Source of the DNA: Phallusia mammillata
Lineage: Eukaryota
Direction of reading: 5' to 3'
Length of the DNA stretch: 64,000 nucleotides
NCBI GenBank assembly: GCA_965637545.1
Contig: OZ281497.1
Coordinates: forward strand, 17,732,001-17,796,000
Positions 15,500 to 55,049 of this stretch are shown here, one piece after another. The stretch's first letter is position 1, and each line of letters begins with the position of its first letter. Made by a program: the position numbers and the translations under genes. The notes beneath the pieces are model-generated. The model was not told the origin of the DNA, made no database searches, and worked only from the letters and a program-made list of their open reading frames with translations.

Positions 15500-18400
15500 A
15501 TGGAATATGGGACTTTTCAAATACTTTGGATAGCATTGAGTATGTTGGTGCTTGCAACAAAACCTACATATGTATCTTCACTAGCTTTAGGTAAGTTTCG
15601 TTTTTTAGTGTTTTGTTGTATCATTGTAGTTTGCAAGTTTTTTTCATTTTAGTGTGTTTTAATTTTCTGAATAAGCATCTTAAAAAGTCAATAAAGTCTT
15701 TGTGTAGTGTTGAGGTATTTGTTGTACAATTAAAAACTTGCAAACATGCATTCATTGTTAGAAACAATGCTCTGCACTTAGTAAGTTTATTGGTGTGGGA
15801 ATCTCACTCCCTCAAAGTGTTCTAAATTCCCCTCAACTGAACAGATTGCGCTAAGACAATGCAGCTGAATCGCGCAGTGTCCACGCGTGTCAGTACATTT
15901 GCGGCAGGGGGATTAGCTCCTCACATGAAAGGGTTTCCCGACTTATCGCTAATTGTGTGCCGCAAATTCAAAAGAAAAGTGCCCCCATTTGTGGAAAACG
16001 CCCAGTTATTCTTGTTGCCGCTGTTTGAACAACTGTAACCCTGCGCGGTCTCTGACACTTCTACATGAACGAAACGATTTGGTTCGCAAACACCGGATGT
16101 ATTCGCCTACACATTGGCTTCCTATTGATCGGATCAATAGATGTTATTTGGGGTTGAATAGTTTTCGTAGATAACGAAATTTTTACACAAATTTTGACAG
16201 AAAATCTGTCCATTGCCCCGTTAGACGACAACGTTGCGTTAGCTATTTGATTTGCAACTTCTACCATGACTGTTTTAATTTATGCTTCCACATGAGTGGA
16301 ACTGTTTTCTAAAGCTGCAAGATGTTATGCTATTGAGGCATAGCACCACGTTAAAAACGATTAAAGCCAATTCAAAACAAACATATCAAGACAAGTGTCT
16401 GTTTGCCAAACAGAACAACGCAATCGGAGAAGACGTTTATTTTGGTTAGGCGACGATCTAACGACCACTAAGTAGTTGAGGGGATAATATTGTTGCCGAT
16501 TGACTGTAACGTCGCACTTAATGGCCAATCGAATACGTTTGTTTTGGACGCTTGTTTCTCTTCTGCGTGGCGATGCCTCCGGGGGCAACGAAAGCGTTAC
16601 TGTCGGTAACTACGTTGCGCGACTGCCTGAAAAGATAGACCCAACTGGCCTGTCATTAAATCGGCATGGAAAGGCGTATTTGGTTACAAGCAGCAACGCT
16701 TGATAACAGGCTTCTATTCACCCCACCCACTTTTAAACAACTCACTGGCATTTTATTCACAAAGCGTTACAACGTACTGTTGTAACTTTGTTTTCTTCTC
16801 TGTGCTATTTGGGTTCCTTCTGCCTGTTTGCTCAGGGGCTCCTCCACATTAACATATGGGCCCTTAAGAACCCTTCAGTCATCTTAATGCTCCAAGTCTG
16901 ACCTAAATACTAGATGTCCATGGCAGTTCTGTATTAATGTCTTCACTTAAACGAATATAGAAATGCTATTTCAGTAATTTTGTCAATTGTTGCTAACCGT
17001 GTAGTGTTCAATATGTTAGCAATGTATTAACAATTTTATGGAAAGATACAACAGAAATATACATAAAAGCTTTCCTACAAAACACTGAATGTATCAGCAT
17101 TTACTTTTTTCCTGCTTACATTGTACATTTGCTCTATTCTTTTAGGCTCATGTGAATTTGAAGGTCAGGACCCTCTCTGCAGTTATCAACAGAGCACTGA
17201 AGATAACTTTGACTGGCAACTTCAAGATGATGGAAAAGGAGGTGGCTTTATGCAAGTGCAAACTCATTTACACAGAGTGGGACAAACTGCCAAGCTTACA
17301 AGTCCCGAGATAAACCAGCAGGTCCTAAACATACCTTGTTAAAAATATAATGTAATATCAGTACTCATTGATATGTTTTTGCTTTTTGTTAAGCTGAGAA
17401 AATAAACTAGTTTGAATGTGTAACAGCTCCACCAATAATGTAAATCATTCTCATTGAAGTTAAAATTGCTGACTTGTGGATTGTTATTGTTCAAAGGGCA
17501 CTCACTGCTTTTCCTTCAATTTTACCAACAAAGCCATTGGCGTGCCGAGCAGCAACAATGGCACTTCAGGTTCAACTGGCCCGCCAGGAAAACTCAATGT
17601 GTATGTGCTTGATGAAACAAACAGCATTGAAAAGCACCCAGTTTGGAGCAGCCCTGACAAAGAATATTCAAGCTGGCAGCCAGTTTTCCTGGCTCTTAAT
17701 CCACAGGGGTACCAGGTGATTCTTCTGTGCTTACCAGCTCTTTTACAAATTTACCCCATGAATTATTAATATTATGCACTTCATGAGATCATATTAGACA
17801 TGCTTGGTGCGAAATATTACTTGTTATGCAGTTTTTCTATTTAATTTACAAGTTATACTAACAATATATATGCTTTACAGGTACAATTTGAAGCACTTGT
17901 AATGGCATCTCGACCTGGGGAAATTCAACTTGATGATATCATGGTCAAATCATCAGCGTGTGGTAAGAAGCCTTTCGTGAAATTATGCAGTTTTGGTAGT
18001 TGTCAATGCTAAAAAATACTTCCAAATCTTTTAGAGTCTGCACCACACTTTCTTCGGTTTGGCAATAAGGAAGTTAATGCTGGACAAAACCAGACCCTTC
18101 AGTGTTTATTGTGGGGTTATCCAAGTCCTGATACCCAAGTTCTTTTACAAAAGTCAACCGGTGAAGTTTATCAATCTACTTCGGTGCAGGAGTATGATGA
18201 CCACCTTGGTGTGATTTTTAGGTAAGTGAATTATTTTCGGTTTTACTTGTATAGGCATTATAAAACTTTACACATTTTGTTTTGTAGCTTTATGAATGTG
18301 GCACTTAATGATGCTGGCTACTACAGGTGTGTTTCGGGGAATGCTACAAGTGTGGGCGTATCAAATTTTGGTTCTCTAAGTGTAAAAGGTATGTTATTAA

Positions 18401-39930: not shown

Positions 39931-40190
39931 TTTTTTAATTACTTCGACATCTTTGATGTTGTGTTACTTCGTGGGTCCATTTGTTGTTGTTGTTGTTTTA
40001 ATTACTTCGACGTCTTTGATGTTGNNNNNNNNNNNNNNNNNNNNNNNNNNNNNNNNNNNNNNNNNNNNNNNNNNNNNNNNNNNNNNNNNNNNNNNNNNNN
40101 NNNNNNNNNNNNNNNNNNNNNNNNNNNNNNNNNNNNNNNNNNNNNNNNNNNNNNNNNNNNNNNNNNNNNNNNNNNNNNNTTGCTTCGCGG
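39931..40190. repeat. Minisatellite (~64-bp unit) running into a 156-N assembly gap (40025-40180)
   Basis: ttttaattacttcgac(a/g)tctttgatgttg occurs twice immediately before the Ns. Confidence 0.75.
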
Positions 40191-42007: not shown

Positions 42008-42922
42008 ATTGTATGACCTTACAGCCTCTGGTAGTTTAGTCTGGTATCATTTGGGCATGGTTATACAAGTATAGCGTCACAATTGTAATGAGAAATCTGA
42101 ACTATCGTTCCGTAAACATTCGTAGAAATCTATTAGTGGTACAAATAACCTTTCCCAAATTCCAAATCGTAGTATTAGCCATTACAGTGGATTATGCCCA
42201 TATTAGTTTTGCTAGGGCATTACGTACTAGCCATAAAAAGTTGGAAGTCCTTGTTGTCTTGGCAACCAACATCATGATACTGGATAACTTATGACGAACG
42301 ACAACAGGCGATGATTACACGGCCCGAAACGATTTACTACGTCACTTGTGGAATACTTTGCGCGGCAAATCATTGTTCGATGAGATTCCACTTATTAGAA
42401 ATCGATAATTGTTAAGCGCTCTTGGTCGATAAGATAAAACGTCAGTTCGGGTTAACTGAACTCGGACGCAAACACATTTAAACGACGCACATCGAAACAG
42501 ACAGTTGAAAAGACAGAATGTGCACTGGGGTATAGAAGTATATCGGTGTGCACATTAGTACCGCTAATTGCGATTTTTAGTGTATTCAATGAAATGTATC
42601 AAGTCAGTTTTTTTAGAAGACAGTTTTGCAATCGTTTCGTTCCGCAAATAGTTTGAGTTTGAAAATCGCCAGAGTTGTCAGGTTAGCTACTAGTCGTTGT
42701 GTCGTCGCTTTCATTACGACGTGTAAAATTTTGGACAATTTGTGTTTGTGCTATGAAATTTGCTGGAGAATATTGTCAAATAATTACATTGTTATTTCAA
42801 CATTTATATGTTTTCGCAGCATATTGTGATACAAATAAGGTCTTAATTAAAAGGAAATATGACGGTGCTCTTAACAATAATAAGCTTTCTTCCAAAAAAT
42901 TGTTTCACAATCCACTAAAAGT

Positions 42923-45900
42923 ATGAAGGTTTTCCATTTTCTATTACTGCTTATGCTTACAGGTAAAGGAACATTATTGCAACCATAAAAATGTTTTTTT
43001 TAATTACAAATTATACATTTTTCAGTGTCCACTGCATTTGGGCAAGAGGACCCCGAAGCACCCCCGGCTGATCCTGAGAACCCTGAAGAGCCGCCTACTG
43101 AGGATCCAGGACCCACGGAACCCCCACCACCACCTTGTGAGGGTGAGTTTTACGCACCGGAGGGGAGCATCAGTTCACCGGATTACCCCCAGAACTACCC
43201 CAACAAACGTAACTGCATCTACAGAATATTGACTGACAACATTATCAACGTAAGTTAGCATTTATGTGTAGATTTGATTCAAATATATATTGCACAAGTT
43301 TTAAATTTGATAGGGTTACAAAAAATATGAGCGACCTAGTTTCTTTCTTATCACATTTAGTTATAGAAGGGAAAAAGGATCAAATAATTTACAAGTTTTG
43401 TTTGCAGTTGATGATTTTAATAGTTTCTCATGATTTAATTTTTTTTGGATTTGTTTTCACCCGTTATCGTAGATCTACTTTGAAACATTCGACCTGGAAT
43501 TTAGTGAGGAATGTCGCTACGACTGGCTGGAGTTTATTTTTAATGCTACGAAACGCGTTAAGAGTTCTCAAAAGTAAGACTATTGGCTGCTTCCACAGCA
43601 GTGACAGGTGCATAGCGAAATCGATTTGTCTTGACGAAGGATACTCAAAAAATAACACAAAAACATCCAAAAAAATGTATTTGCCATAAATTTGTAAACA
43701 AACAAACTAACACATAAACATCGGGAATTTAAACTCTTCAGAAATATATCGATTTTGCTACACACCTTGTATGTGTCTGTTTTAGATGTTGATATCGTGT
43801 TTTATTTTTGATGTTAAGTTGTATTTCGAATCGTTTGAGATCGAGGAAAGCGAGGACTGCACATACGATTTTCTAAACATTGTCTTTAACGCCACCTCGC
43901 GGAACCCAGATACAAATAGGTATAGTTGCCAAGCAACCGGCACGACATGCGGGGTGACCTAGTTCGCTTGCTATGCTTAAAAACATGTTCTGCAATAAAA
44001 CAAGTTGCGATAGGCAGTTTCTTGACGCAAAAACGTTGAATTTTCCGTCACTAGCACTTTGCCACAGCTTATGGAGTAACGCTTTGCGGTTTATGCGACT
44101 AACAAGTTGATGGTTGCCGCTTCGGGGGCTAAGCCACAAATCGCCCAAGTAGTTCTGTATCTGCCATTAACCTTTACGCCGAATAAGCTGCAATGCTTTA
44201 TTCCGTAACGCTGAAATAGTCATAGTGCTTTGCCCTGTGTTAAAAATTGAATAAAAGGTGTGCGTGTTATATGAACATTTTGTATAATTGCCATGGGTAT
44301 TTATATTTTGCGTCAGATATTGCGGGAGAGGACTTGGCAAGGTGAATGATGGACACTTGCGCGGGAATGGTCCACTGATTGTTGGCTTCGTTAGCGATGA
44401 TTCGGATAACATGAAAGGCTTCAAGTTTGATTTTAAATGTAAGCTTCAGATATTTATCTTTCAATGAACCTTAAAGTGGCTGCTACCAACAGTCTCCTAG
44501 TGAATATTTTTTTCTACTTTTATTTGCTTTGTGTCGTTGTGTTAGAGGCAAAACACATTCATTTTGAAACGTTATGAAAATGTGTTTTCATTGTGTTTGT
44601 GCATTGGGGATTAAATTTGTTTGTTTTCAGTTGAACTCGAAGGTCCAGACCCGTGCGAGTCCGGTCCTTGTCAGAACGGGGGAGAATGTCAAACGTTCAC
44701 TGGATATTACAAGTGTTCCTGCCCAAATGGCTACGCAGGATTTAATTGCGAAATAGGTGTGTAGTAGTAACAAAAAACAAAATATTTTTGATTATTTGTT
44801 CTTTTAATACATTTCGTTTTGTTGCACAATGACCGGACAAAGGCAAATTTTCAATATTCGAACTGTCGCCTGATTGTCGAAAAATGTTACATGTTACAAA
44901 AAAGGAAAAAATAGCTCATTTAATTTACATTTTCCTTGGCATCATAAACGAAAGCTCAAAAATCTTAATTTGTGTGTCGTTGTGTACAGACAAGGATGAG
45001 TGCGCATCAATTCCATGCCAGAATGGCGGGGAGTGTGTCGATGAACTTGATGGCTATACTTGTGAATGTATCAACGAGTTTGACGGAACCCACTGCGAAA
45101 CAGGTAACCAACTTTATCGAAAGAACATGCAAAGGATGAAATATATATTTCTAATGTTATTTTTCAGCACCACAACCTTGTCTTTCTGATCCTTGTCAGA
45201 ACGGTGGGATTTGTGTGGACAGAGTTACCGATTACGTGTGTTCTTGTCCGAAAGACTTTCATGGCGACCACTGCGAGGAATCAAGTAAGCCTGATAAATA
45301 TTTTGCAACAGTGTGAGTTGCACAAATGAAGTATTTTGTTTAACCTTGGCTGATCGTGCTTTTTCAAACCCTGAGTAATTGTTCAAAAGGTATGCCATCT
45401 GCATGGACAAAAAACAGAAAAATGCGGTACAACCGTATGCCTATATTCGTGTTGAAATTTATTTTTTATACAGTTCGAAACTATTCATCATAGTATATTC
45501 AGTTTAAGCTGCAGATAGTGCACAGTGTTTCGAGCTAAAAATTCTCATCAGTGCAGCTGGTGACGAGAGATATGCCGTATTGACTAGTGTTGCTGCACTG
45601 TACCTTATATAGGTCGAAACAGTGTGGATTGACTGCAGCTTATCATTTATTGGCTTAATGCTTTTACATATTCAGTTTATTATGTACAAATAACCAATTT
45701 GTGAAACATAACCCAGTTCCCACTCCGCCTCCTCCACCAACCACCACAACCACTACTGTTGCCACGACAACAATCCATCCTGAAGCTCCTGATGCATCAA
45801 CCACTGAAACACCAGGAGGTGATTCGTCTGATCCTGCTGATTCTGTTGATCCAGCTGATCCCGAAGATGTTGGAGAACCTGGAAAAAAAGATGACAATCT

Positions 45901-48900
45901 CCCACCTGCTGACAGTAGGCATTTTCTCAGATGTTATATAGTTTTTTTGGGGGATAGATCTTGTATGTTGTTGTTTCAGATACCGACAATACCGCTGATG
46001 GAACAGGCAAGCATTCCAAGTATGTTTTTTGTGTGTCTATCGATAAATGTATTCAAACTACTTAACTTTTGCAACGATTTCTTCAGCGTTGACAATCCTA
46101 TCATAAGTTTGCGTTGACAGTCCTTTATAAACAAGAAAATAATATATTTTAGCTAAAATTTTTGGCAAACACTATGTTGTTATTTTAAAACTTCACAATT
46201 TTTCAGTTCTGCGGTAATCGCGGCTATCGTGATCATCGTCATTATAGCTCTAATCTTGGCCGCTATCTTTCTTTGGTATTGGTGGAAGTTTCATAAGAGC
46301 AACGACACTGAGGAAATCAAAGCGCCCCTCGATAAAGAGGTGACACTCATTAACATGAAGACGAACTCCGAACACGGAGAAAGTAAGAAGAAAAAATGTT
46401 GTCATTATAGTCAACCACGTAACAACTATGTAGCGCTCCTCTGGCAGTTGTATTTTCGTACGTACGTTTCGACGTCGTCTACAGGTCGCCTTCACCAGGG
46501 TAAATAACACCATGATGCACGATAAGCAAAGAAAAAAGAACCAAACGCAAGCACGTCACAACGCGATGAAAACACTGTGCAATAACAAATGAATCGACCT
46601 CTTAACCACATAATTTACAAACAAACGTGGCAAAAATATGTAACGATGCGACAATATACAGAAACTTTCATTGAATGTAATGTTTTGGGGCAGATAAAGA
46701 AGGTAAACGTCATTCCCGCACGACATCCATCAACAGTGTGACCATGAAGGGGAATTCAAAGAGCTCACACGACCAACTTCTTCACAAACTGAAAAAGATG
46801 TCCGCTGGTATCATAATGGAAGAAGTCCCTTCCGAACCGCAGGTACAGGCTGTGTAGTAAATGTTCAATTCTATATGTTATCTTGGGTTTTTGACCTGTT
46901 ATTAGACATCATTACTTTCAATTGTCAACTATTTATTTTTTTCTACCCTCAGAGAGTACATGCATTCAACAGTCCAAATCACCCTCAACAAGTCATGGGA
47001 CCCACCGCGTACCCCAACCCAAACGTACCCCACAACCCACATCTGCAACAGCAACAACAGGAAGCACTTAGCAACGGCACTTACCAAGCACAACATGCTC
47101 CCCCAGACCATTCAGCACTAAAGTGAGTTATTCGACACAAACTTTTGTTTTCCAATTTCAAAGCTTCACAAACAAGGCGATCTGTCATACTCTTTAAGTG
47201 ATTATAATGGACCCTTTATTCATTGCTGATCTTGAATATAATCCATCTCTTGATCGGAAATTCCACAGCTTTTGTGTGTAAATTGGCTGTTAATTACAAA
47301 ATCAATACCGCAGGAGAATCTCCATTCCTGTATCGCAGAACGAGATGAGTCAATTGGACAAGAGGCAGCTCAACGAGCCCTTCTACGCATCACCGACAAA
47401 AGGTGTCAACTTATCATCGTTAGTCGTGTGCTACTGTTTTGTGAATATGCGATTCGCTATTTATTCGAGTTTTTGCTTGTATTATGTTACAGACTGTTTT
47501 ATGGTTCGAGATGTATTGTAATACAAGAACATTTATACAACAGAAAAATACGCTTCATTGTTTCAAATATCTTTCGTGTAAAACAAACACATTGGTAACT
47601 TCTACCATATTTTTACCGCTTTGTATTGAAATGGGTAAACCTCACTGGAAATTGCTCATTCTTAATCAGTGCTGGATTAACCATTAGGCAAAGTAGACAC
47701 GTGTCTACAGGCCAGTCAAACATCCAGGCCACTTTAAACGATTTGGCAACAGCAGACCCTTAATCCGGCACTGTTCTTGATACTCTTGTGTTAATTTCTG
47801 TAGGTAATTACTACCCAGCACAATATGTATCACCTGATGCAGCGGTTCGCCTCTTTAACCAAATGAAGCAAACTGGATCTCCAAACTTTGATTTTCGCAA
47901 CGCTGTTTCGCAATGTAAGTCATCATCGTAAGCCTAACAAGATATCGAACAGTCATAATAATTTGTTTTGTGTTGCAGTTGGCCCCAACGACTACACCAA
48001 AAACCCGCACGGCAGTTTTGTTCCAAAAAATCCTCCAATCACAACAGTCGCAAATGTTCTTCAGCCAAGGCCCCCAGCACAATTTCCTCCACACAACAAC
48101 CCGGCGCCCTTCAAGCAGACTCAACTGCCGCATGCCACTGTTCCCACGCAACCTTTACCGGTCAACCCTCCTAGAAATTACGACGTGAATCAAACGATGG
48201 AGCTCAGTCCCGAGGAGGCAGCAGGAGTGGTCAATCATATTCTTTCGTCTAAGCCCAAGAATAGCTTTGTGACCACACAGGTATTTAGAGTCTTTGTCGA
48301 TTTTAGAAAAACGCAAAAATCAGTACAATTCGCAAAACGTTATTGCGCTCGATTGATACGCGTTTCATGTTGTGCAACATCAAGGAAAGCAGTAGTTACG
48401 CAGCGAATTTATTGTGTTAGTTATTGTGTACGGCTATCTTCAATCATTTGTCAACACACACCGCAGTATTTGATAAGCGCTATTAAAGAAGAGCAAATGT
48501 GTACTGTTCATTCCTTGTTACAGGAAGCCATGGATATCCTTGACAACGTTCGTAAAGATCTCTATGGGAAAGAACCGCCTCCATTAAACCGTGAAAAAAG
48601 TGTGTTTCTGAGGCCGCACGAGGTAGCAAAAATGATGAACTCTTTCCACAAGCGACCCCGCTATGAAGATGACACAGAACCGAAAAACGAAACAACAAGC
48701 TTTCAAAGCTCTTACGGGTTAGTTCAACACCGTGTTGTTAGCTTCTTTCATTTTTTGGTTCTTGCACTCGAAAAATTTTGTGCGCGAGGGACGCATTTAG
48801 TAGCCCTGTAACACCACGTAGAGTTACAACCAGATCATTTGTAACAGTTGTTAAACACGCTGCTGAAAAAGGCAATCTCAGTGACATAAAACAAGGATTG

Positions 48901-49976
48901 TGAAACGTATTGTACTGCCGGTGTGTTTGCTGGGTTATGATAAGAATTTATTTGTGTAAACATGTTTTGGTATATGTGACCAAATTTTCCTATTTCATGT
49001 TAGCCCTTCTGACACTGAAAACAGACATCGAAAATGGAATCGGGATTTCAGGGGGTGCACCCCGATACGAGAAGAAACCGGAACAGATAAGGATGCGGAT
49101 GATCACAAACATGAACATGAGCAGCAGCACAACAAACCAAGGTTGGCAAATGATGCACTATTTAAGTTTAAACATGAATAACCCGTCGTATGTTTTTGCA
49201 GCAAAATCTACGAACCTGAATCGAAAGAACCAGCAAAACACGATCGACTTCGAAAACGCCCGAAACGCTTTCCGTCAGCTCGAACCCTTGATCCTGATGA
49301 AAAAGTGCACGACTGGTTAAAAAACTCTCCGAAATTTAAAAAGGTAATAGACTAAAACAGTATGCAAAATACTTATAAGTATACCTTTACGCTGTAAATT
49401 TCATGTCACAGAATCATAGTTGATTACTGTATTCAATCCTTTACTCTTTCAGGCCGGGTACAAGCCACGTCGCCAGGGTTCGCCAGCGAGCACTGTCCCC
49501 ACTGAGACTTACACTGTGGTGACGAGACCAATGCCGGCAAAGCAAAACGAACATAAAACGTATGAACCCACAAGTAGTTCCTATATATATATACATGATA
49601 TCTAAACCGAATTTTGCTTTGTTAAGTGTTGACTAAACTTTTGATGTTTTTTTTTCAATAGTGGGACGAAAGGTAGCCCTGTCTCTAATGACGACGGAGA
49701 TAAAAGTTCAGCCATGGTTCAGAGAACAATTAAACAAACAAGACGAGTTCTTCCCGACAGCAAACCGATGTTGCCTATCACAGGTAAACATCAAGCAAGG
49801 AAATAATTCGTGAAAAATTCCTCACTCGTTTTGTTTCAGAAAACAAAGCCAAGTCTCTTGTTGAAAAACTAATCAAGGCCCCGGCCAGAAGCAACCAGAA
49901 TGTGGTTGGACCAGGTTTGACCGTAGAAAGAGAAAACGCCTTTGTTGGTGAAGGAGCTGGACTTGACTATTTTTAA
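42923..49976 (+). CDS. Type I membrane protein: signal peptide, acidic/Pro linker, CUB, 3 EGF (one cbEGF-like), Pro/Thr mucin stalk, TM, ~590-aa low-complexity cytoplasmic tail
   Basis: Exons: 42923-42962 ([13 protein letters not shown]), 43026-43249, [43473-43573 or 43819-43919], 44317-44438, 44631-44756, 44990-45103 (DKDEC...), 45168-45284, 45676-45914, 45980-46019, 46207-46382 (TM), 46694-46842, 46953-47122, 47314-47402, 47804-47914, 47979-48280, 48524-48717, 49004-49141, 49202-49343, 49453-49559, 49662-49783, 49840-49976 (ends GLDYF*). All junctions are in phase except 45284 to 45676, which needs a 3n+1 exon (candidate 45474-45492). Confidence 0.82.
47667..47773. mobile_element. 107-bp hAT-type MITE in an intron
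   Basis: TIR cagtgctggattaa / ttaatccggcactg (13/14). TSD ttcttaat / ttcttgat (7/8). Confidence 0.85.
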
Positions 49977-51114: not shown

Positions 51115-52868
51115 CTATATTCTCTGAGTACTGCGGTGTTGGCGAGATTCACGGGACGCAGGACGTTGGTTACCAGGTAAGGCAGACGGACGTTGGTGAT
51201 GAACACGTTGGTTGTTCTCTGTGATATATCCAAAGTTCATGTAACTCCGGTTTTGAGATAAAGGCGGTGGTTGATCCTTTTTCGCCTGTTTCCTCCCAAT
51301 GCGACAGAAAATACAAACACAGATGAAGGAAGCGATGAATGTAGCGGCGGGGATTGCCAGCGATAGGATAATAAGCAGTAGGCTGTAATTGCGTTCAATG
51401 ATCACCTATAGTAAACATATGTCACTTTATTGGTACGGCTGTTACAATCTTATTTAAACTTGCAATAAAAAAAACTTCCTACTATAATGATATAACACAC
51501 CGTGACGATAGAAGACACTTCTGGTTAAACTAAAACAAATCCATTTTTGATTCCTAAAGTGACATCTGGCATACTTTATGACCATCTTGCGTAAACTTCG
51601 TGACCAAACAAGCACAAAGGCTATACTTTTGTTATGTTTACATACATCAACAAATCTCCATCATACAATACTGCAGTAAAAGTTCCTGTTTACCTGTGAA
51701 GGGTTATTTGGATTGTACATACAGGGGTATGACACATCTGTATCTCCAAACTCTGATAAAAAGTTGTCGATTTCCATCGTATTCTGCTTTTTGTGCCTTT
51801 TACACACTTGCGTTGAACACTGAAAATGCAAATAATAAGTTGCATTTAATTTTCAGGTAGACTTGTAAGTTGCGTTATTTTTTTGGCCTAAATTAGACGT
51901 ACAATACATGCAAATTTCCATGTACCTCGCACTTCCCTATCAAAAAAGGCTATGTAATTCCGACGGGCATGTTATTTTACATTCCTCTTATGGGCGTCAA
52001 ACCAAATGGCGCAACAACATCAAAGTTCTACCTTTGGAACAATCTCAAATCTTACTTTTTTGTCAACAACTTTTTAAGTTAATCTCTAATGTAAACTTCT
52101 ATAAAGACTTAGTTGAATGGTTTTCAGGCTTTTCTTGATACTGTTTGAATTGTGTATACATAAGTATACTTACGTCACTGTTTCCAGAAACAGCCATTCC
52201 CTCGTCTCTATGAATCATTGACTTTATTGTCGAATTTTCCTAAAATAACAACATTATTAAAAATGTGCGGTCAACAAAAAACGATCACGGTAGAATTTAA
52301 CTTACATATGGGCCATCAATGTTGTATTGAACGAAAATTTGCAAACAGGGAAAACTTGATTTGCAGTAGGGACTGTTGTCATTGTTTAAACCCGAACATT
52401 TGCACTGCCGGTATTCCAAGATTTCGTAACGAAGAACATTGCATCTTGTTTCCTAAGTACAAATATAGGTGAAGTTGGCCTTACATAAATCTAGTGTGGT
52501 TGCTGGTCATATTTTACAAGTTTTTTACGATTGGCGGAAAAGCAAAGTAATGTTTTTTTTACATTACATGTTAAACCGGTTTGTATAATGCAAAAGAGAA
52601 CAGACCATTTAGATTATTGTGTGTAAAACTGTCAAACATAAAGAAAGCTACCATTAAACTGAGCATACAGGTGTTATAACCATAAGCATTCTAAAAATTG
52701 CCCATTTGCAATTGTTTTCTCACCTTGTAATTAACTGCTCGAAGCCCTGGCCTGGCAAACAGCAAGCCGTCAACAATCAAGGCTATTCCACTTACCAAAC
52801 ACATTACAACTGCTATAGAAATCACACACGGAGCACCCTCGCAAGTTTTGCGTTTAGGTGGTCGGTAT
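51115..52868 (-). CDS. KCNMB: Two-TM protein resembling BK (Ca-activated K+) channel beta subunits (KCNMB/CaKB family); first exon not located
   Basis: In-phase exons 52868-52724 (TM1), 52452-52306 (ETRCNVL...CKC...YCKSSFPCLQIFVQY), 52239-52174, 51819-51694 (CSTQVC...YPCMYNP) and 51405-51115 (VIIERNYS plus TM2). This matches the KCNMB pattern E.xC...C.xC...C..S.YPCLQV.V...CSY.P.C...F.C.Y.P...VIL.K.Y. None of the three middle exons appears in the ORF track. Confidence 0.72.
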
Positions 52869-55049
52869 CTAAAGTGAATACTCATTTTTCTTTCTATTCC
52901 TGCAACTAAAACAGTGTTTTCAGCACCTTCGCAAGTCGCATACTACACGGGAAATGCGAACGATTATTATTTACCTACTAGCTGCTCGTAGCCTGAAGCG
53001 ACAAAGCCACGAGTTTACCAGTCACGTCACAATGAGAAGGGAAACATTCGAGAATCTCTTAGTTGTCATAATACCTGACTTCTAGAGGGATGTTAACCCT
53101 TGACATTAATTAACATAATATTTTATTTAAACAAATTTCTTTTATGTTTAGTATCAAATAATTTTGTTCAAAAATTGACTTTCTGTCCATAACAGCAATT
53201 TTGTTGTTTAGAAACTTACGCAAAACAAAACATAAATCCTAAATCTAAAATCCTACGCTAGTGTGCATGGGTATTCAGCACTAGTTTTAGCATTGTATTC
53301 TATTACATTTTTACACATAAATTATGCGGTAGTGCTCATTTCTAGGCGATGAACAGCGCAATGTATGATTTGTACTTTGTGTTGGCATTGGCCGAAGCGG
53401 AGATTGTGAATCAGTCAATTGGCAGGCCGGAAATATCCGCAACAACGTCATTTAAACTGATTAGGTTAGATTGCGGTTATAAAGTTCGTTTGTGGACATT
53501 ATAAGTTGTTGTGGCTAAAAAAAACTTTAAATCACCGCAATTTGCAACATCAAATTGATGATTTTGTTGAGAATGATTTGAGATGACTATAAGCGAAGCA
53601 CACACCGGTACGAAATTCGAGCTAGCATGCCATAAATTAGATGTCACTATAACGTTTCCATCGTTTTTAGTACAGTTAGCATTTTAGTATATAGCACTCA
53701 AATGTTTCAAAATAAAACAAAAATGATTCTGATCATACAAAATGCGCTCAGCGTATTGATTGAATTGTAGGCCGCGGCTGATAGTTTTTACCTTTAACAG
53801 TTGTTTGTGCGGCATAAAGTCGAGTGTCGTTAACATTTTAAAAGCATACCCATATAATGTCCAGACCCTATGTTTTTATTATTATATCGCATTAAAACTT
53901 TCTTTTCATGTGCAGGAATTACATTGCAACATACACTCTGCTGAGTGCAATTATTTATATGACTAACAACTATTGATAAACAGTTTTATCAAGTAGCAAC
54001 AGAAAGAATCTTTACACAAACAATAGTTTTTGACTTTATAGCGAAAAGTTTTGACATGTTGGCACATTTAGTGTGGACTTTTTGCTTTAAAATACAATCA
54101 ATAAACTGTGGCCCATTATTTAAACTTTGCTGCTTGCAATTCGAGCGGTTTTTATTGTACTGATTCAGTTTTTACTTGAACTGAACAGAATAAGTTTGAC
54201 GCCACTTTTACAATTACCTAACATATAACGTGTTCTCAATTATTTTGCTGTATCTTGCTCGTCTGCAGTATTTTAAAGTGAAGGAAGTGGCATTTGCTGG
54301 TTACCTAAAACAGGAATATTTTTTTATTTTTCACGAAAAAAAACGCAGTAACAAAAGGAAGGGGAGAAAAAAACATAAGGGTTTACAAGAGTACGATAGT
54401 GTTGCAACCAAGCGACGTGTCAGGCAAGAATGTATTACAAAAAAGGGAAATAAAACGTTAAACAAGGTATACTGCATTACAGACTGGATAATGGAGCAAC
54501 TGATTACGAAAATGTCGGTTTTAATGGAACAGTCTTTTTGTTTGTATATTCTACACACACAAAAGAGGCGCTTCTTCGTTGGTTTTCACATATTTTTGCA
54601 TTTCAGCATTTTTTCAAAAAGCTTTAACACATGTCAGTACAAAGTAATACTGATACTGGGCTAAAAAATCTAGGATACAAATTTTGTAACAATACACATG
54701 CAAGTTTGCACAGGTGTTGAAAAATAATCTTAATGGTCGAATTAACGCGATAAAATAGTTTTCAAATAAACTAGTCAGACGAGAGCTTCAATAAGCAAGT
54801 TAACAAACACACGACCATGCGCAAAAGTAGAAAACAAATGTACAAAAGGGGTGAATAAATAAATTGGACATGGAAAATATGCTCAAAAATGATATAAAAT
54901 CGGTCAAAAAACAAACAAACCGGTATTATCCACACATGCAAATAAATCGGTTTGTTTTGTTTAGTCAATTAAGAAACAAGTGCCAACAACACAACATCTG
55001 TAGTTCTCCCACAAACTCTTACTAACGATCACAAGATTTTAAGAAATGT

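What the first reader, a model, noticed from the sequence alone, without database searches (positions are those of the whole stretch)
43473..43919. Mutually exclusive duplicated exons swap the ligand-binding core of a CUB domain
Two paralogous exons are each exactly 101 nt, phase 0 to phase 2, with valid AG/GT sites. Exon A (43473-43573) encodes [34 protein letters not shown]; exon B (43819-43919) encodes [34 protein letters not shown]. Either joins 43249 to 44317 in frame (...YCG); including both or neither frameshifts. They encode the F-x-L/I-E and C-x-Y-D segments, which in Ca-binding CUB domains hold the acidic Ca ligands and the ligand-contact loops. One gene could therefore make two receptors with different specificity, a small-scale Dscam-like switch.
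Basis: partly seen in the sequence, partly recalled or inferred. Interest (0 to 1): 0.75.

Follow-up and report, generated by a model that had tools for sequence, protein, structure and literature searches.

The report
Two alternative exons in CUB receptor
A sea-squirt gene for a membrane protein has two side-by-side versions of the exon that encodes the calcium- and ligand-binding loop of its CUB domain, and only one can be used per message; this is a sound but ordinary case of a well-known splicing device.

Summary
Exons A (43473-43573) and B (43819-43919) are each 101 nt, phase 0 to 2, with AG/GT sites, and 16/33 residues are identical. Either one completes a full Pfam CUB domain (73 and 79 bits). 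Using both or neither shifts the frame into early stops.

- **RNA:** the one transcript contig available is spliced 43249|43473 and 43573|44317. Exon A is used and exon B is skipped.
- **Exon B:** I found no RNA for it. It is 22/33 identical to the matching exon of a Clavelina lepadiformis gene, while introns no longer align and synonymous sites are saturated, so it must be translated.
- **Relative:** the syntenic Clavelina gene also has an A-like exon followed by a B-like exon. Its A-like exon has AT where the GT donor should be.
- **Binding residues:** both versions keep the invariant Glu and Asp of the calcium site and differ at the residues beside them.

Best reading: a genuine pair of tandem-duplicated, mutually exclusive exons, kept exclusive by reading frame. 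Different ligand specificity is plausible but untested, and "Dscam-like" overstates it. Earlier notes of this scan (unchecked) list other such pairs in this genome.

The parts
42923..42962 (+). Exon 1: start codon and first part of the signal peptide ([13 protein letters not shown], ending in phase 1)
   Evidence: Read from the sequence: ATG at 42923, donor cag|gtaaag. Inferred; no RNA covers it.
43026..43249 (+). Exon 2: end of the signal peptide, an acidic and Pro-rich linker, and the N-terminal third of the CUB domain ([38 protein letters not shown])
   Evidence: Acceptor tttcag| at 43025 and donor AAC|gtaagt. The 3' end 43190-43249 lies in the spliced contig of run X1. 24/38 and 21/38 aa identical to the two Clavelina genes.
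43473..43573 (+). Exon 3A, 101 nt, phase 0 to 2: [33 protein letters not shown](K)
   Evidence: Included in the spliced X1 contig with exact GT..AG joints 43249>43473 and 43573>44317. Isoform A scores 73.2 bits on Pfam CUB and AF2 pLDDT 95.8.
43819..43919 (+). Exon 3B, 101 nt, phase 0 to 2: [33 protein letters not shown](R)
   Evidence: Isoform B scores 79.1 bits on Pfam CUB and pLDDT 96.8. 22/33 aa and 71/101 nt identical to the Clavelina gene-1 exon, with mismatches concentrated at third codon positions (p 5.7e-5). No RNA evidence; the X1 contig skips it.
44317..44438 (+). Exon 4: C-terminal third of the CUB domain ([40 protein letters not shown]), with the partner Cys and the third acidic Ca ligand (Asp99)
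   Evidence: 44317-44411 lies in the X1 contig. Asp99 is invariant in A1 and A2.
44631..44756 (+). Exon 5: EGF-like domain 1 ([19 protein letters not shown]...)
   Evidence: Splice sites read. tblastn with Clavelina P0120 gives 59% identity.
44990..45103 (+). Exon 6: EGF-like domain 2
45168..45284 (+). Exon 7: EGF-like domain 3
45700..46400 (+). Approximate region of the Thr/Pro-rich stalk exon and the transmembrane exon ([25 protein letters not shown]). Exon borders were not determined.
   Evidence: Open frames. Inferred only.
46696..49785 (+). Cytoplasmic-tail exons with motifs shared with the Clavelina genes (RTTSINS.TM...KLKKMS..IIMEEV; TLDPDEKV; RTIKQTR). Borders were not determined.
   Evidence: tblastn of P0101 and P0120 against the window.

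Best explanation
**What it is.** This is a pair of tandem-duplicated, mutually exclusive exons in a single-pass membrane protein. The protein has a signal peptide, an acidic linker, one CUB domain, three EGF domains, a Thr/Pro stalk, a transmembrane helix and a cytoplasmic tail. The genome is an ascidian's.

**How it works.** Each mRNA takes either exon 3A or exon 3B as the middle third of the CUB domain. That third holds one long beta strand, the loop with the Ca2+/ligand residues Glu47, Tyr54 and Asp55, the next strand, and a glycosylated surface loop. Because each exon is 101 nt (3n+2), a message with both or with neither is frame-shifted into an early stop and would presumably be removed by nonsense-mediated decay. 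Only one-exon messages make protein.

**What differs.** The two proteins keep the Ca2+ site but differ at 18 of 34 positions:
- residue 48 next to the Ca-ligand Glu is Phe in A and Glu in B;
- residue 53 next to the conserved Tyr is Arg in A and Thr in B;
- the net charge of the segment is -2 in A and -6 in B.

They therefore probably bind partners with different preference or affinity.

**Shown:** the anatomy, the frame logic, exon A splicing with exon B skipped, coding-type conservation of both exons, and a confident CUB fold for both.

**Inferred:** inclusion of exon B in this species, decay of the out-of-frame forms, and any functional difference.
For: - **Anatomy and frame:**
- **Domain:** both isoforms are full-length Pfam CUB.
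- **RNA:** one 256-nt contig of run X1 joins 43190-43249, 43473-43573 and 44317-44411 at exact GT..AG borders. The genome has no contiguous retrocopy that could explain it.
- **Closest relatives:** two tandem Clavelina lepadiformis genes. The downstream CaKB gene is shared. Clavelina gene 2 has an A-like exon (L013:17425-17525) followed by a B-like exon (17790-17890), each 101 nt, in the same order.
- **Selection:** introns do not align between the species, and dS is saturated while dN is 0.20-0.62. Mismatches fall on third codon positions: own_B vs Cl1_B p 5.7e-5, own_B vs Cl2_B p 9e-4, own_A vs Cl2_A p 0.005.
- **Binding residues:** Y21, E47, D55 and D99 are invariant in both 30-sequence CUB alignments.
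- **Fold:** AF2 pLDDT 95.8 and 96.8 with the same strand pattern. The isoform A model, the only one searched, matches solved CUB domains at TM 0.8-0.85.
- **Role of the residues:** in C1s CUB1, Glu45, Tyr52 and Asp53 are the Ca2+/lysine-binding residues (PMC4222235).
Against: - No transcript containing exon B was seen. Only one low-depth contig (4.4) from one run covers the region, and ten other runs of this species, listed as RNA only by guess, held next to none of it.
- In the Clavelina reference the A-like exon has AT instead of GT at the donor, and no in-frame canonical donor exists. Clavelina gene 1 has no A-type exon at all. The A type can therefore be lost.
- A likelihood test on 34 residues cannot reject two independent duplications.
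- The Clavelina models that use the B-type exon are automatic and partly wrong: P0120 starts with tail exons of the neighbouring gene.
Confidence: 0.75

Rival explanations
1. Exon 3A is the only exon used in this species, and exon 3B is a leftover copy that is no longer spliced.
For: The only transcript contig includes A and skips B. B's donor gtatag looks weaker than A's gtaaga.
Against: - B is the better-conserved of the two: 22/33 aa and 71/101 nt identical to Clavelina gene 1, with a codon-position pattern (p 5.7e-5), while introns are saturated.
- It keeps both splice sites, an open frame and every invariant CUB residue.
- Contigs drop minor variants, so one contig cannot show absence (notes).
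Confidence: 0.1
2. Exon 3B is the working ancestral exon. Exon 3A is a younger or dispensable alternative with little separate function, on its way to being lost in some lineages.
For: - Both annotated Clavelina proteins use B-type exons.
- Clavelina gene 1 has no A exon.
- The Clavelina gene 2 A-like exon has an AT donor.
- A-type exons evolve faster: dN 0.49 against 0.20-0.35.
Against: - A is the form found in RNA here.
- A-type exons in both species keep the frame, the length and all invariant CUB residues, with a coding-type mismatch pattern (p 0.005).
- The Clavelina A-like exon is no further from B-type exons than the expressed A exon is.
Confidence: 0.12
3. The choice is actively directed by competing RNA pairings (a docking/selector type of switch), not by frame and decay alone.
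For: - In Clavelina a 23-nt stem (-21.4 kcal/mol; 1 of 80 shuffles as good) pairs the acceptor of the A-like exon with a site in the A-B intron.
- In the window a weak A/U-rich analogue flanks exon A: 43440-43456 with 43659-43675, -12.8 kcal/mol.
- A single-copy 150-nt hairpin lies in the B-to-exon-4 intron.
Against: - No intron sequence is conserved between the species.
- The window's exon-flanking stem is within shuffle expectation.
- Whole-intron duplex energies are no better than shuffles.
- The hairpin has no counterpart of similar strength in Clavelina.
Confidence: 0.15

Closest known systems
Tandem exon duplication-derived mutually exclusive exons (the general class surveyed for human genes in PMC8373072)
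   Same: The exons are adjacent and homologous, with equal length and phase. One of the pair substitutes for the other inside a folded domain. The pair is retained in a distant relative.
   Different: It lies in an uncharacterised ascidian CUB-EGF membrane protein. I found no paper that pairs 'mutually exclusive exons' with 'CUB domain'. Only one of the two forms has been seen in RNA.
Ca2+-binding CUB domains of C1s/C1r/MASPs, cubilin, PCPE-1 and neuropilin
   Same: Full CUB fold and the conserved Tyr/Glu/Asp/Asp signature (Y21, E47, D55, D99). In C1s CUB1 this signature binds Ca2+ and a ligand lysine (PMC4222235).
   Different: There is one CUB domain, followed by three EGF domains and a membrane anchor. 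Identity to any solved CUB is only about 30%. The ligand is unknown and Ca2+ binding is untested.
Dscam1-type exon clusters with docking and selector RNA pairing
   Same: Alternative homologous exons recode part of an extracellular binding domain, one per message.
   Different: There are two exons, not dozens. No conserved docking or selector element was found. The 3n+2 exon length explains exclusivity without any pairing.
Clavelina lepadiformis unnamed proteins P0101 and P0120 (GCA_961645235.1)
   Same: Same CUB, three EGF, stalk and tail architecture. CUB identity to isoform B is 65% and 60%. Same neighbour gene, CaKB. Gene 2 has the A-like plus B-like exon pair.
   Different: Clavelina has two tandem genes where the window has one. 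Gene 1 has only the B-type exon. The A-like exon of gene 2 reads AT at the donor.

Membership tests
CUB domain (Pfam PF00431) | Full-length match above the curated cut-off | tested here: met
   Isoform A 73.2 bits and isoform B 79.1 bits, profile 1-110 of 110, cut-off 21.4.
CUB domain (Pfam PF00431) | Beta-sandwich fold like solved CUB domains | tested here: met
   AF2 pLDDT 95.8 and 96.8. The isoform A model, the only one searched, gave Foldseek TM 0.80-0.85 to neuropilin a2, TSG-6 CUB_C and PCPE-1.
Ca2+-binding CUB subclass | Conserved Tyr, Glu, Asp, Asp (C1s Tyr17, Glu45, Asp53, Asp98) at the right spacing | tested here: met
   Y21, E47, D55 and D99 are invariant in 30 aligned CUB domains, for both isoforms. 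The residue roles come from PMC4222235. The mapping onto C1s numbering uses the alignment ranges and my own recollection of the C1s sequence.
Ca2+-binding CUB subclass | Ca2+ is actually bound, and ligand binding depends on it | not testable with these tools
   Needs protein expression and a binding assay.
Tandem-duplicated mutually exclusive exons | Adjacent homologous exons of equal length and phase with intact splice sites | tested here: met
Tandem-duplicated mutually exclusive exons | Each exon is found alone in spliced transcripts | tested here: inconclusive
   Exon A alone: yes, one contig. Exon B: no transcript found. Only assembled contigs of small runs were available.
Tandem-duplicated mutually exclusive exons | Joint inclusion or joint skipping is absent or unproductive | tested here: met
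   Both cases shift the frame into early stops. Actual absence in RNA could not be measured.
Tandem-duplicated mutually exclusive exons | Both copies are under protein-level selection or conserved in relatives | tested here: met
   The pair is present in Clavelina gene 2. Codon-position tests give p 5.7e-5 for B and 0.005 for A, and introns are unalignable. Caveat: the Clavelina A-like exon has an AT donor.
Docking-site/selector RNA switch (Dscam type) | Conserved intron elements that pair competitively next to each variant exon | tested here: not met
   No conserved intron sequence. The candidate stems are species-specific, and the one in the window is not above shuffles.

The most novel reading that the evidence does not exclude
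The A/B exon pair predates the split of two ascidian orders. It is a regulated switch that gives one CUB-EGF receptor two ligand preferences by changing the residues beside its Ca2+/lysine-binding site. A stem that masks the acceptor of exon A helps to set the choice.
Probability: 0.2. Interest if true: 0.5.

Novelty: new member of a known kind. Interest (0 to 1): 0.33.

Why it matters
This is a natural experiment on a common recognition module. The same CUB scaffold and the same Ca2+ ligands carry two different sets of neighbouring residues. Expressing both ectodomains could show how the residues around the conserved Glu, Tyr and Asp tune what a Ca2+-binding CUB domain binds.

For genome annotation, it shows that the ascidian gene models miss one exon of the pair. 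The Clavelina model uses only the B type, and the transcript found here uses only the A type. It adds one more case to the exon pairs of this kind that earlier, unchecked notes of this scan report in this genome. It does not reveal a new mechanism.

Tried and rejected
- **Word search:** a search with the 112-aa isoform B found nothing in the permitted length range.
- **More orthologues:** two further word searches, with P0120 and with the CUB part of P0101, found no orthologue beyond the two Clavelina genes. Other hits were driven by EGF repeats. Conservation therefore rests on one relative.
- **Exhaustive search:** multi-CUB proteins dominated the list, and only two single-CUB hits were useful.
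- **Paralogues:** the own genome has no close paralogue and no retrocopy.
- **RNA runs:** both run searches gave one run with a small share (X1) and two DNA runs. Ten other runs of this species, listed as RNA only by guess, held next to none of the words. The DNA control X3 laid only repeat fragments, so it added nothing.
- **Tree:** a bootstrap tree run timed out. The topology test was inconclusive.
- **RNA pairing:** whole-intron duplex folding was no better than shuffles. Rfam found nothing in 42800-44600.
- **Other ways to enforce exclusivity:** steric hindrance is rejected because the A-B intron is 245 nt. Incompatible U2/U12 splice sites are rejected because all sites are GT-AG.

Full report
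**1.

- Exon A is 43473-43573 and exon B is 43819-43919.
- Each is 101 nt, starts in phase 0 and ends two bases into a codon.
- Exon A is bounded by cgtag| and |gtaaga; exon B by gttaag| and |gtatag.
- The exon before ends at 43249 (|gtaagt), and the exon after starts at 44317 (gcgtcag|).
- The two exons share 52/101 bases and 16/33 residues.
- A tblastn of isoform B against the whole window finds exon A at E 1.4e-7. It finds no third copy and no second CUB domain.
- Joining up+A+down or up+B+down gives an open frame. Joining A+B gives a stop inside exon B, and skipping both gives a stop in the next exon.
- Each isoform matches the Pfam CUB model over its full length, at 73.2 and 79.1 bits against a cut-off of 21.4.

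**2. The gene**

From open frames and splice sites, and from tblastn with the Clavelina proteins, the + strand gene runs as follows.

| Part | Coordinates |
|---|---|
| Signal-peptide exon | 42923-42962 |
| Exon 2: acidic Pro-rich linker and first third of the CUB domain | 43026-43249 |
| Exon 3A or 3B | 43473-43573 or 43819-43919 |
| Exon 4: last third of the CUB domain | 44317-44438 |
| EGF exon 1 | 44631-44756 |
| EGF exon 2 | 44990-45103 |
| EGF exon 3 | 45168-45284 |
| Thr/Pro-rich stalk and transmembrane exon | near 45700-46400 |
| Cytoplasmic-tail exons | up to about 49785 |

It is a single-pass membrane protein with one CUB domain. Only the exons around the CUB domain have RNA support. 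The other borders are inferred.

**3. RNA evidence**

Two run searches found two DNA runs that hold the region fully and one run, X1, with a small share. Laying X1, two runs of the same study and one DNA run on 42800-45400 gave one X1 contig of 256 nt at depth 4.4.
- It lies on 43190-43249, 43473-43573 and 44317-44411, with joints 43249>43473 and 43573>44317 at GT..AG.
- This is a spliced message with exon A included and exon B skipped.
- The genome holds no contiguous copy of this junction-spanning sequence, so the contig is not a retrocopy.
- No contig contains exon B.
- This is one low-depth contig from one sample, and assembled contigs drop minor forms. It shows that A is used, not that B is unused.

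**4. Relatives**

The exhaustive protein search was dominated by multi-CUB proteins. It gave two single-CUB hits, P0101 (65% identical) and P0120 (60%). Both are unnamed proteins of the ascidian Clavelina lepadiformis. They lie in tandem on one contig, followed by a CaKB (BK-channel beta) gene on the other strand. The window has the orthologous CaKB gene at 51268-52885 on the minus strand, so the locus is syntenic with Clavelina gene 2.

In both annotated Clavelina proteins the middle CUB segment is B-like. At the DNA level:
- Clavelina gene 2 has, between its flanking CUB exons, an A-like exon at L013:17425-17525 (ISFNTFSLENSQNCRYDFLEFVFEASNLSSVPR), followed by a B-like exon at 17790-17890.
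- Each is 101 nt, and the order is the same as in the window.
- Clavelina gene 1 has only a B-like exon, and its introns are too short to hide another.

Two further word searches found no other orthologues, so this is the only relative I could examine.

**5. Selection**

Introns of the two species share nothing longer than chance words. The single 13-base hit lies inside exon B. Synonymous divergence is saturated in every pair, and dN is 0.20-0.62.

| Pair | Identity | Third-position test |
|---|---|---|
| Window exon B vs Clavelina gene-1 exon | 22/33 aa, 71/101 nt | p 5.7e-5 |
| Window exon B vs Clavelina gene-2 B-like exon | 19/33 aa | p 9e-4 |
| Window exon A vs Clavelina A-like exon | 16/33 aa | p 0.005 |

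- Exon B is at least as conserved as the constant first CUB exon (24/38), and mismatches fall on third codon positions in all three pairs.
- An exon that was never translated would not keep this pattern across such a distance.
- Exon B must therefore be translated. It cannot be read in frame together with A, so it must replace A in some messages. This is the main argument for mutual exclusivity, and it is an inference.

**6. One duplication or two?**

- A-type exons of both species share T5, L8, R15, E20, F21 and the junction Lys. B-type exons have S/T, I, T/K, N, I/V and Arg at those positions.
- The order is the same, with the A type first.
- Against this, the two Clavelina gene-2 exons share S2 and S26.
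- A likelihood comparison on 34 residues or 101 bases cannot reject independent duplications (delta lnL 0.3 and 2.4).

I favour one duplication before the species split, but it is not proven.

**7. A caveat from Clavelina**

The A-like exon there has a good acceptor and an open frame. At the donor position, however, the sequence reads aaaa|ataacg where the window has aaaa|gtaaga, and no other GT gives the right phase. This could be a recent loss, a polymorphism or a base error; I could not check reads. Together with the absence of an A exon in Clavelina gene 1, it shows that the A type can be lost. The Clavelina A-like exon is no more diverged from B-type exons than the expressed A exon of the window, so any loss is recent.

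**8. What the swap changes in the protein**

In alignments of either isoform with 29 other CUB domains, Y21, C27, E47, D55, D99 and G106 are invariant. By spacing and by the alignment ranges to C1s, E47, Y54 and D55 correspond to C1s Glu45, Tyr52 and Asp53. In C1s, Glu45 (with Asp98 and Ser100) contacts the ligand lysine, Asp53 is essential to the Ca2+ site, and mutating Glu45, Tyr52 or Asp98 strongly alters binding (PMC4222235). The residue-by-residue mapping also uses my memory of the C1s sequence.

Both isoforms fold with high confidence, at pLDDT 95.8 and 96.8, with the same strands. The isoform A model, the only one I searched with Foldseek, matches solved CUB domains at TM 0.80-0.85.

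The swapped residues 39-72 cover most of strand 36-45, the loop 46-55 with the Ca ligands, strand 56-60, the loop 61-69 with a conserved N-A-T sequon, and the start of strand 70-73. The isoforms differ at 18 of 34 positions:
- residue 48 is Phe in A and Glu in B;
- residue 53 is Arg in A and Thr in B;
- residue 56 is Trp in A and Phe in B;
- the surface loop is KRVKSSQK in A and SRNPDTNR in B;
- the net charge of the segment is -2 in A and -6 in B.

The Ca2+ site is kept and its surroundings change. This fits, but does not show, a difference in ligand preference.

**9. How exclusivity is enforced**

- The frame rule is enough on its own.
- The A-B intron is 245 nt, which is too long for steric exclusion.
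- All sites are GT-AG.
- I looked for RNA pairings. Whole-intron duplexes are no better than shuffles.
- The best exon-flanking stem in the window, 43440-43456 with 43659-43675, is weak (-12.8 kcal/mol).
- In Clavelina a 23-nt stem covers the acceptor of the A-like exon and pairs with the A-B intron (-21.4 kcal/mol; 1 of 80 shuffles as good).
- The positions in the two species are analogous, but the sequences are not conserved. I treat this as a lead only.

**10. Comparison with what is known, and verdict**

Tandem-duplicated, mutually exclusive exons are a well-described class, and in human genes they are the best-conserved kind of alternative splicing (PMC8373072). I found no paper that combines 'mutually exclusive exons' with 'CUB domain'. 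The seven papers that hold 'mutually exclusive', 'tandem exon duplication' and 'CUB' did not look relevant. In the one I opened, 'cub' occurs only in a journal DOI in the reference list.

Earlier notes of this scan, which are unchecked, name the genome as Phallusia mammillata. Twenty notes in this genome matched the words 'mutually exclusive', and seven of the eight shown describe other exon pairs of this kind. This fits the view that the present case is one of many.

This is a well-founded new example of a known device, in a domain where it does not seem to have been described. The functional claim is reasonable but untested, and the Dscam comparison is too strong.

Noticed in passing
window 44065-44214: A roughly 150-nt near-perfect hairpin lies in the intron between exon 3B and exon 4 (46-nt arms, -57.2 kcal/mol, z -4.0). 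It is single-copy in this genome, has no Rfam match and has no counterpart of similar strength in the Clavelina intron. It could be an old palindromic insertion or a structure that shortens this intron.
   Followed up: partly
L013:17526-17527 (Clavelina lepadiformis, gene 2): The A-like exon has AT where the GT donor should be, while its frame and acceptor are intact. This could be a recent loss, a polymorphism or a base error.
   Followed up: partly
L013:10001-19448: Clavelina has two tandem CUB-EGF genes where the window has one. The annotated protein P0120 begins with about 115 residues that match cytoplasmic-tail exons (window 49206-49785), so the Clavelina model probably fuses the tail of gene 1 to gene 2.
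   Followed up: partly
L013:17414-17436 with 17657-17679: A 23-nt stem (-21.4 kcal/mol, 1 of 80 shuffles as good) would mask the acceptor of the Clavelina A-like exon.
   Followed up: partly
window 44846-44885 and 42985-43005 / 43436-43457: Contigs of DNA run X3 at very high depth (up to about 4700) match only these short intron pieces. They are probably fragments of high-copy repeats.
   Followed up: no
window 51268-52885 (minus strand): A CaKB (BK-channel beta subunit) gene is orthologous exon by exon to the Clavelina gene next to the CUB-EGF pair (tblastx E 4e-40). This confirms synteny.
   Followed up: partly
window 40025-40179: A run of 155 N lies upstream of the gene. I left it as it is.
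   Followed up: no
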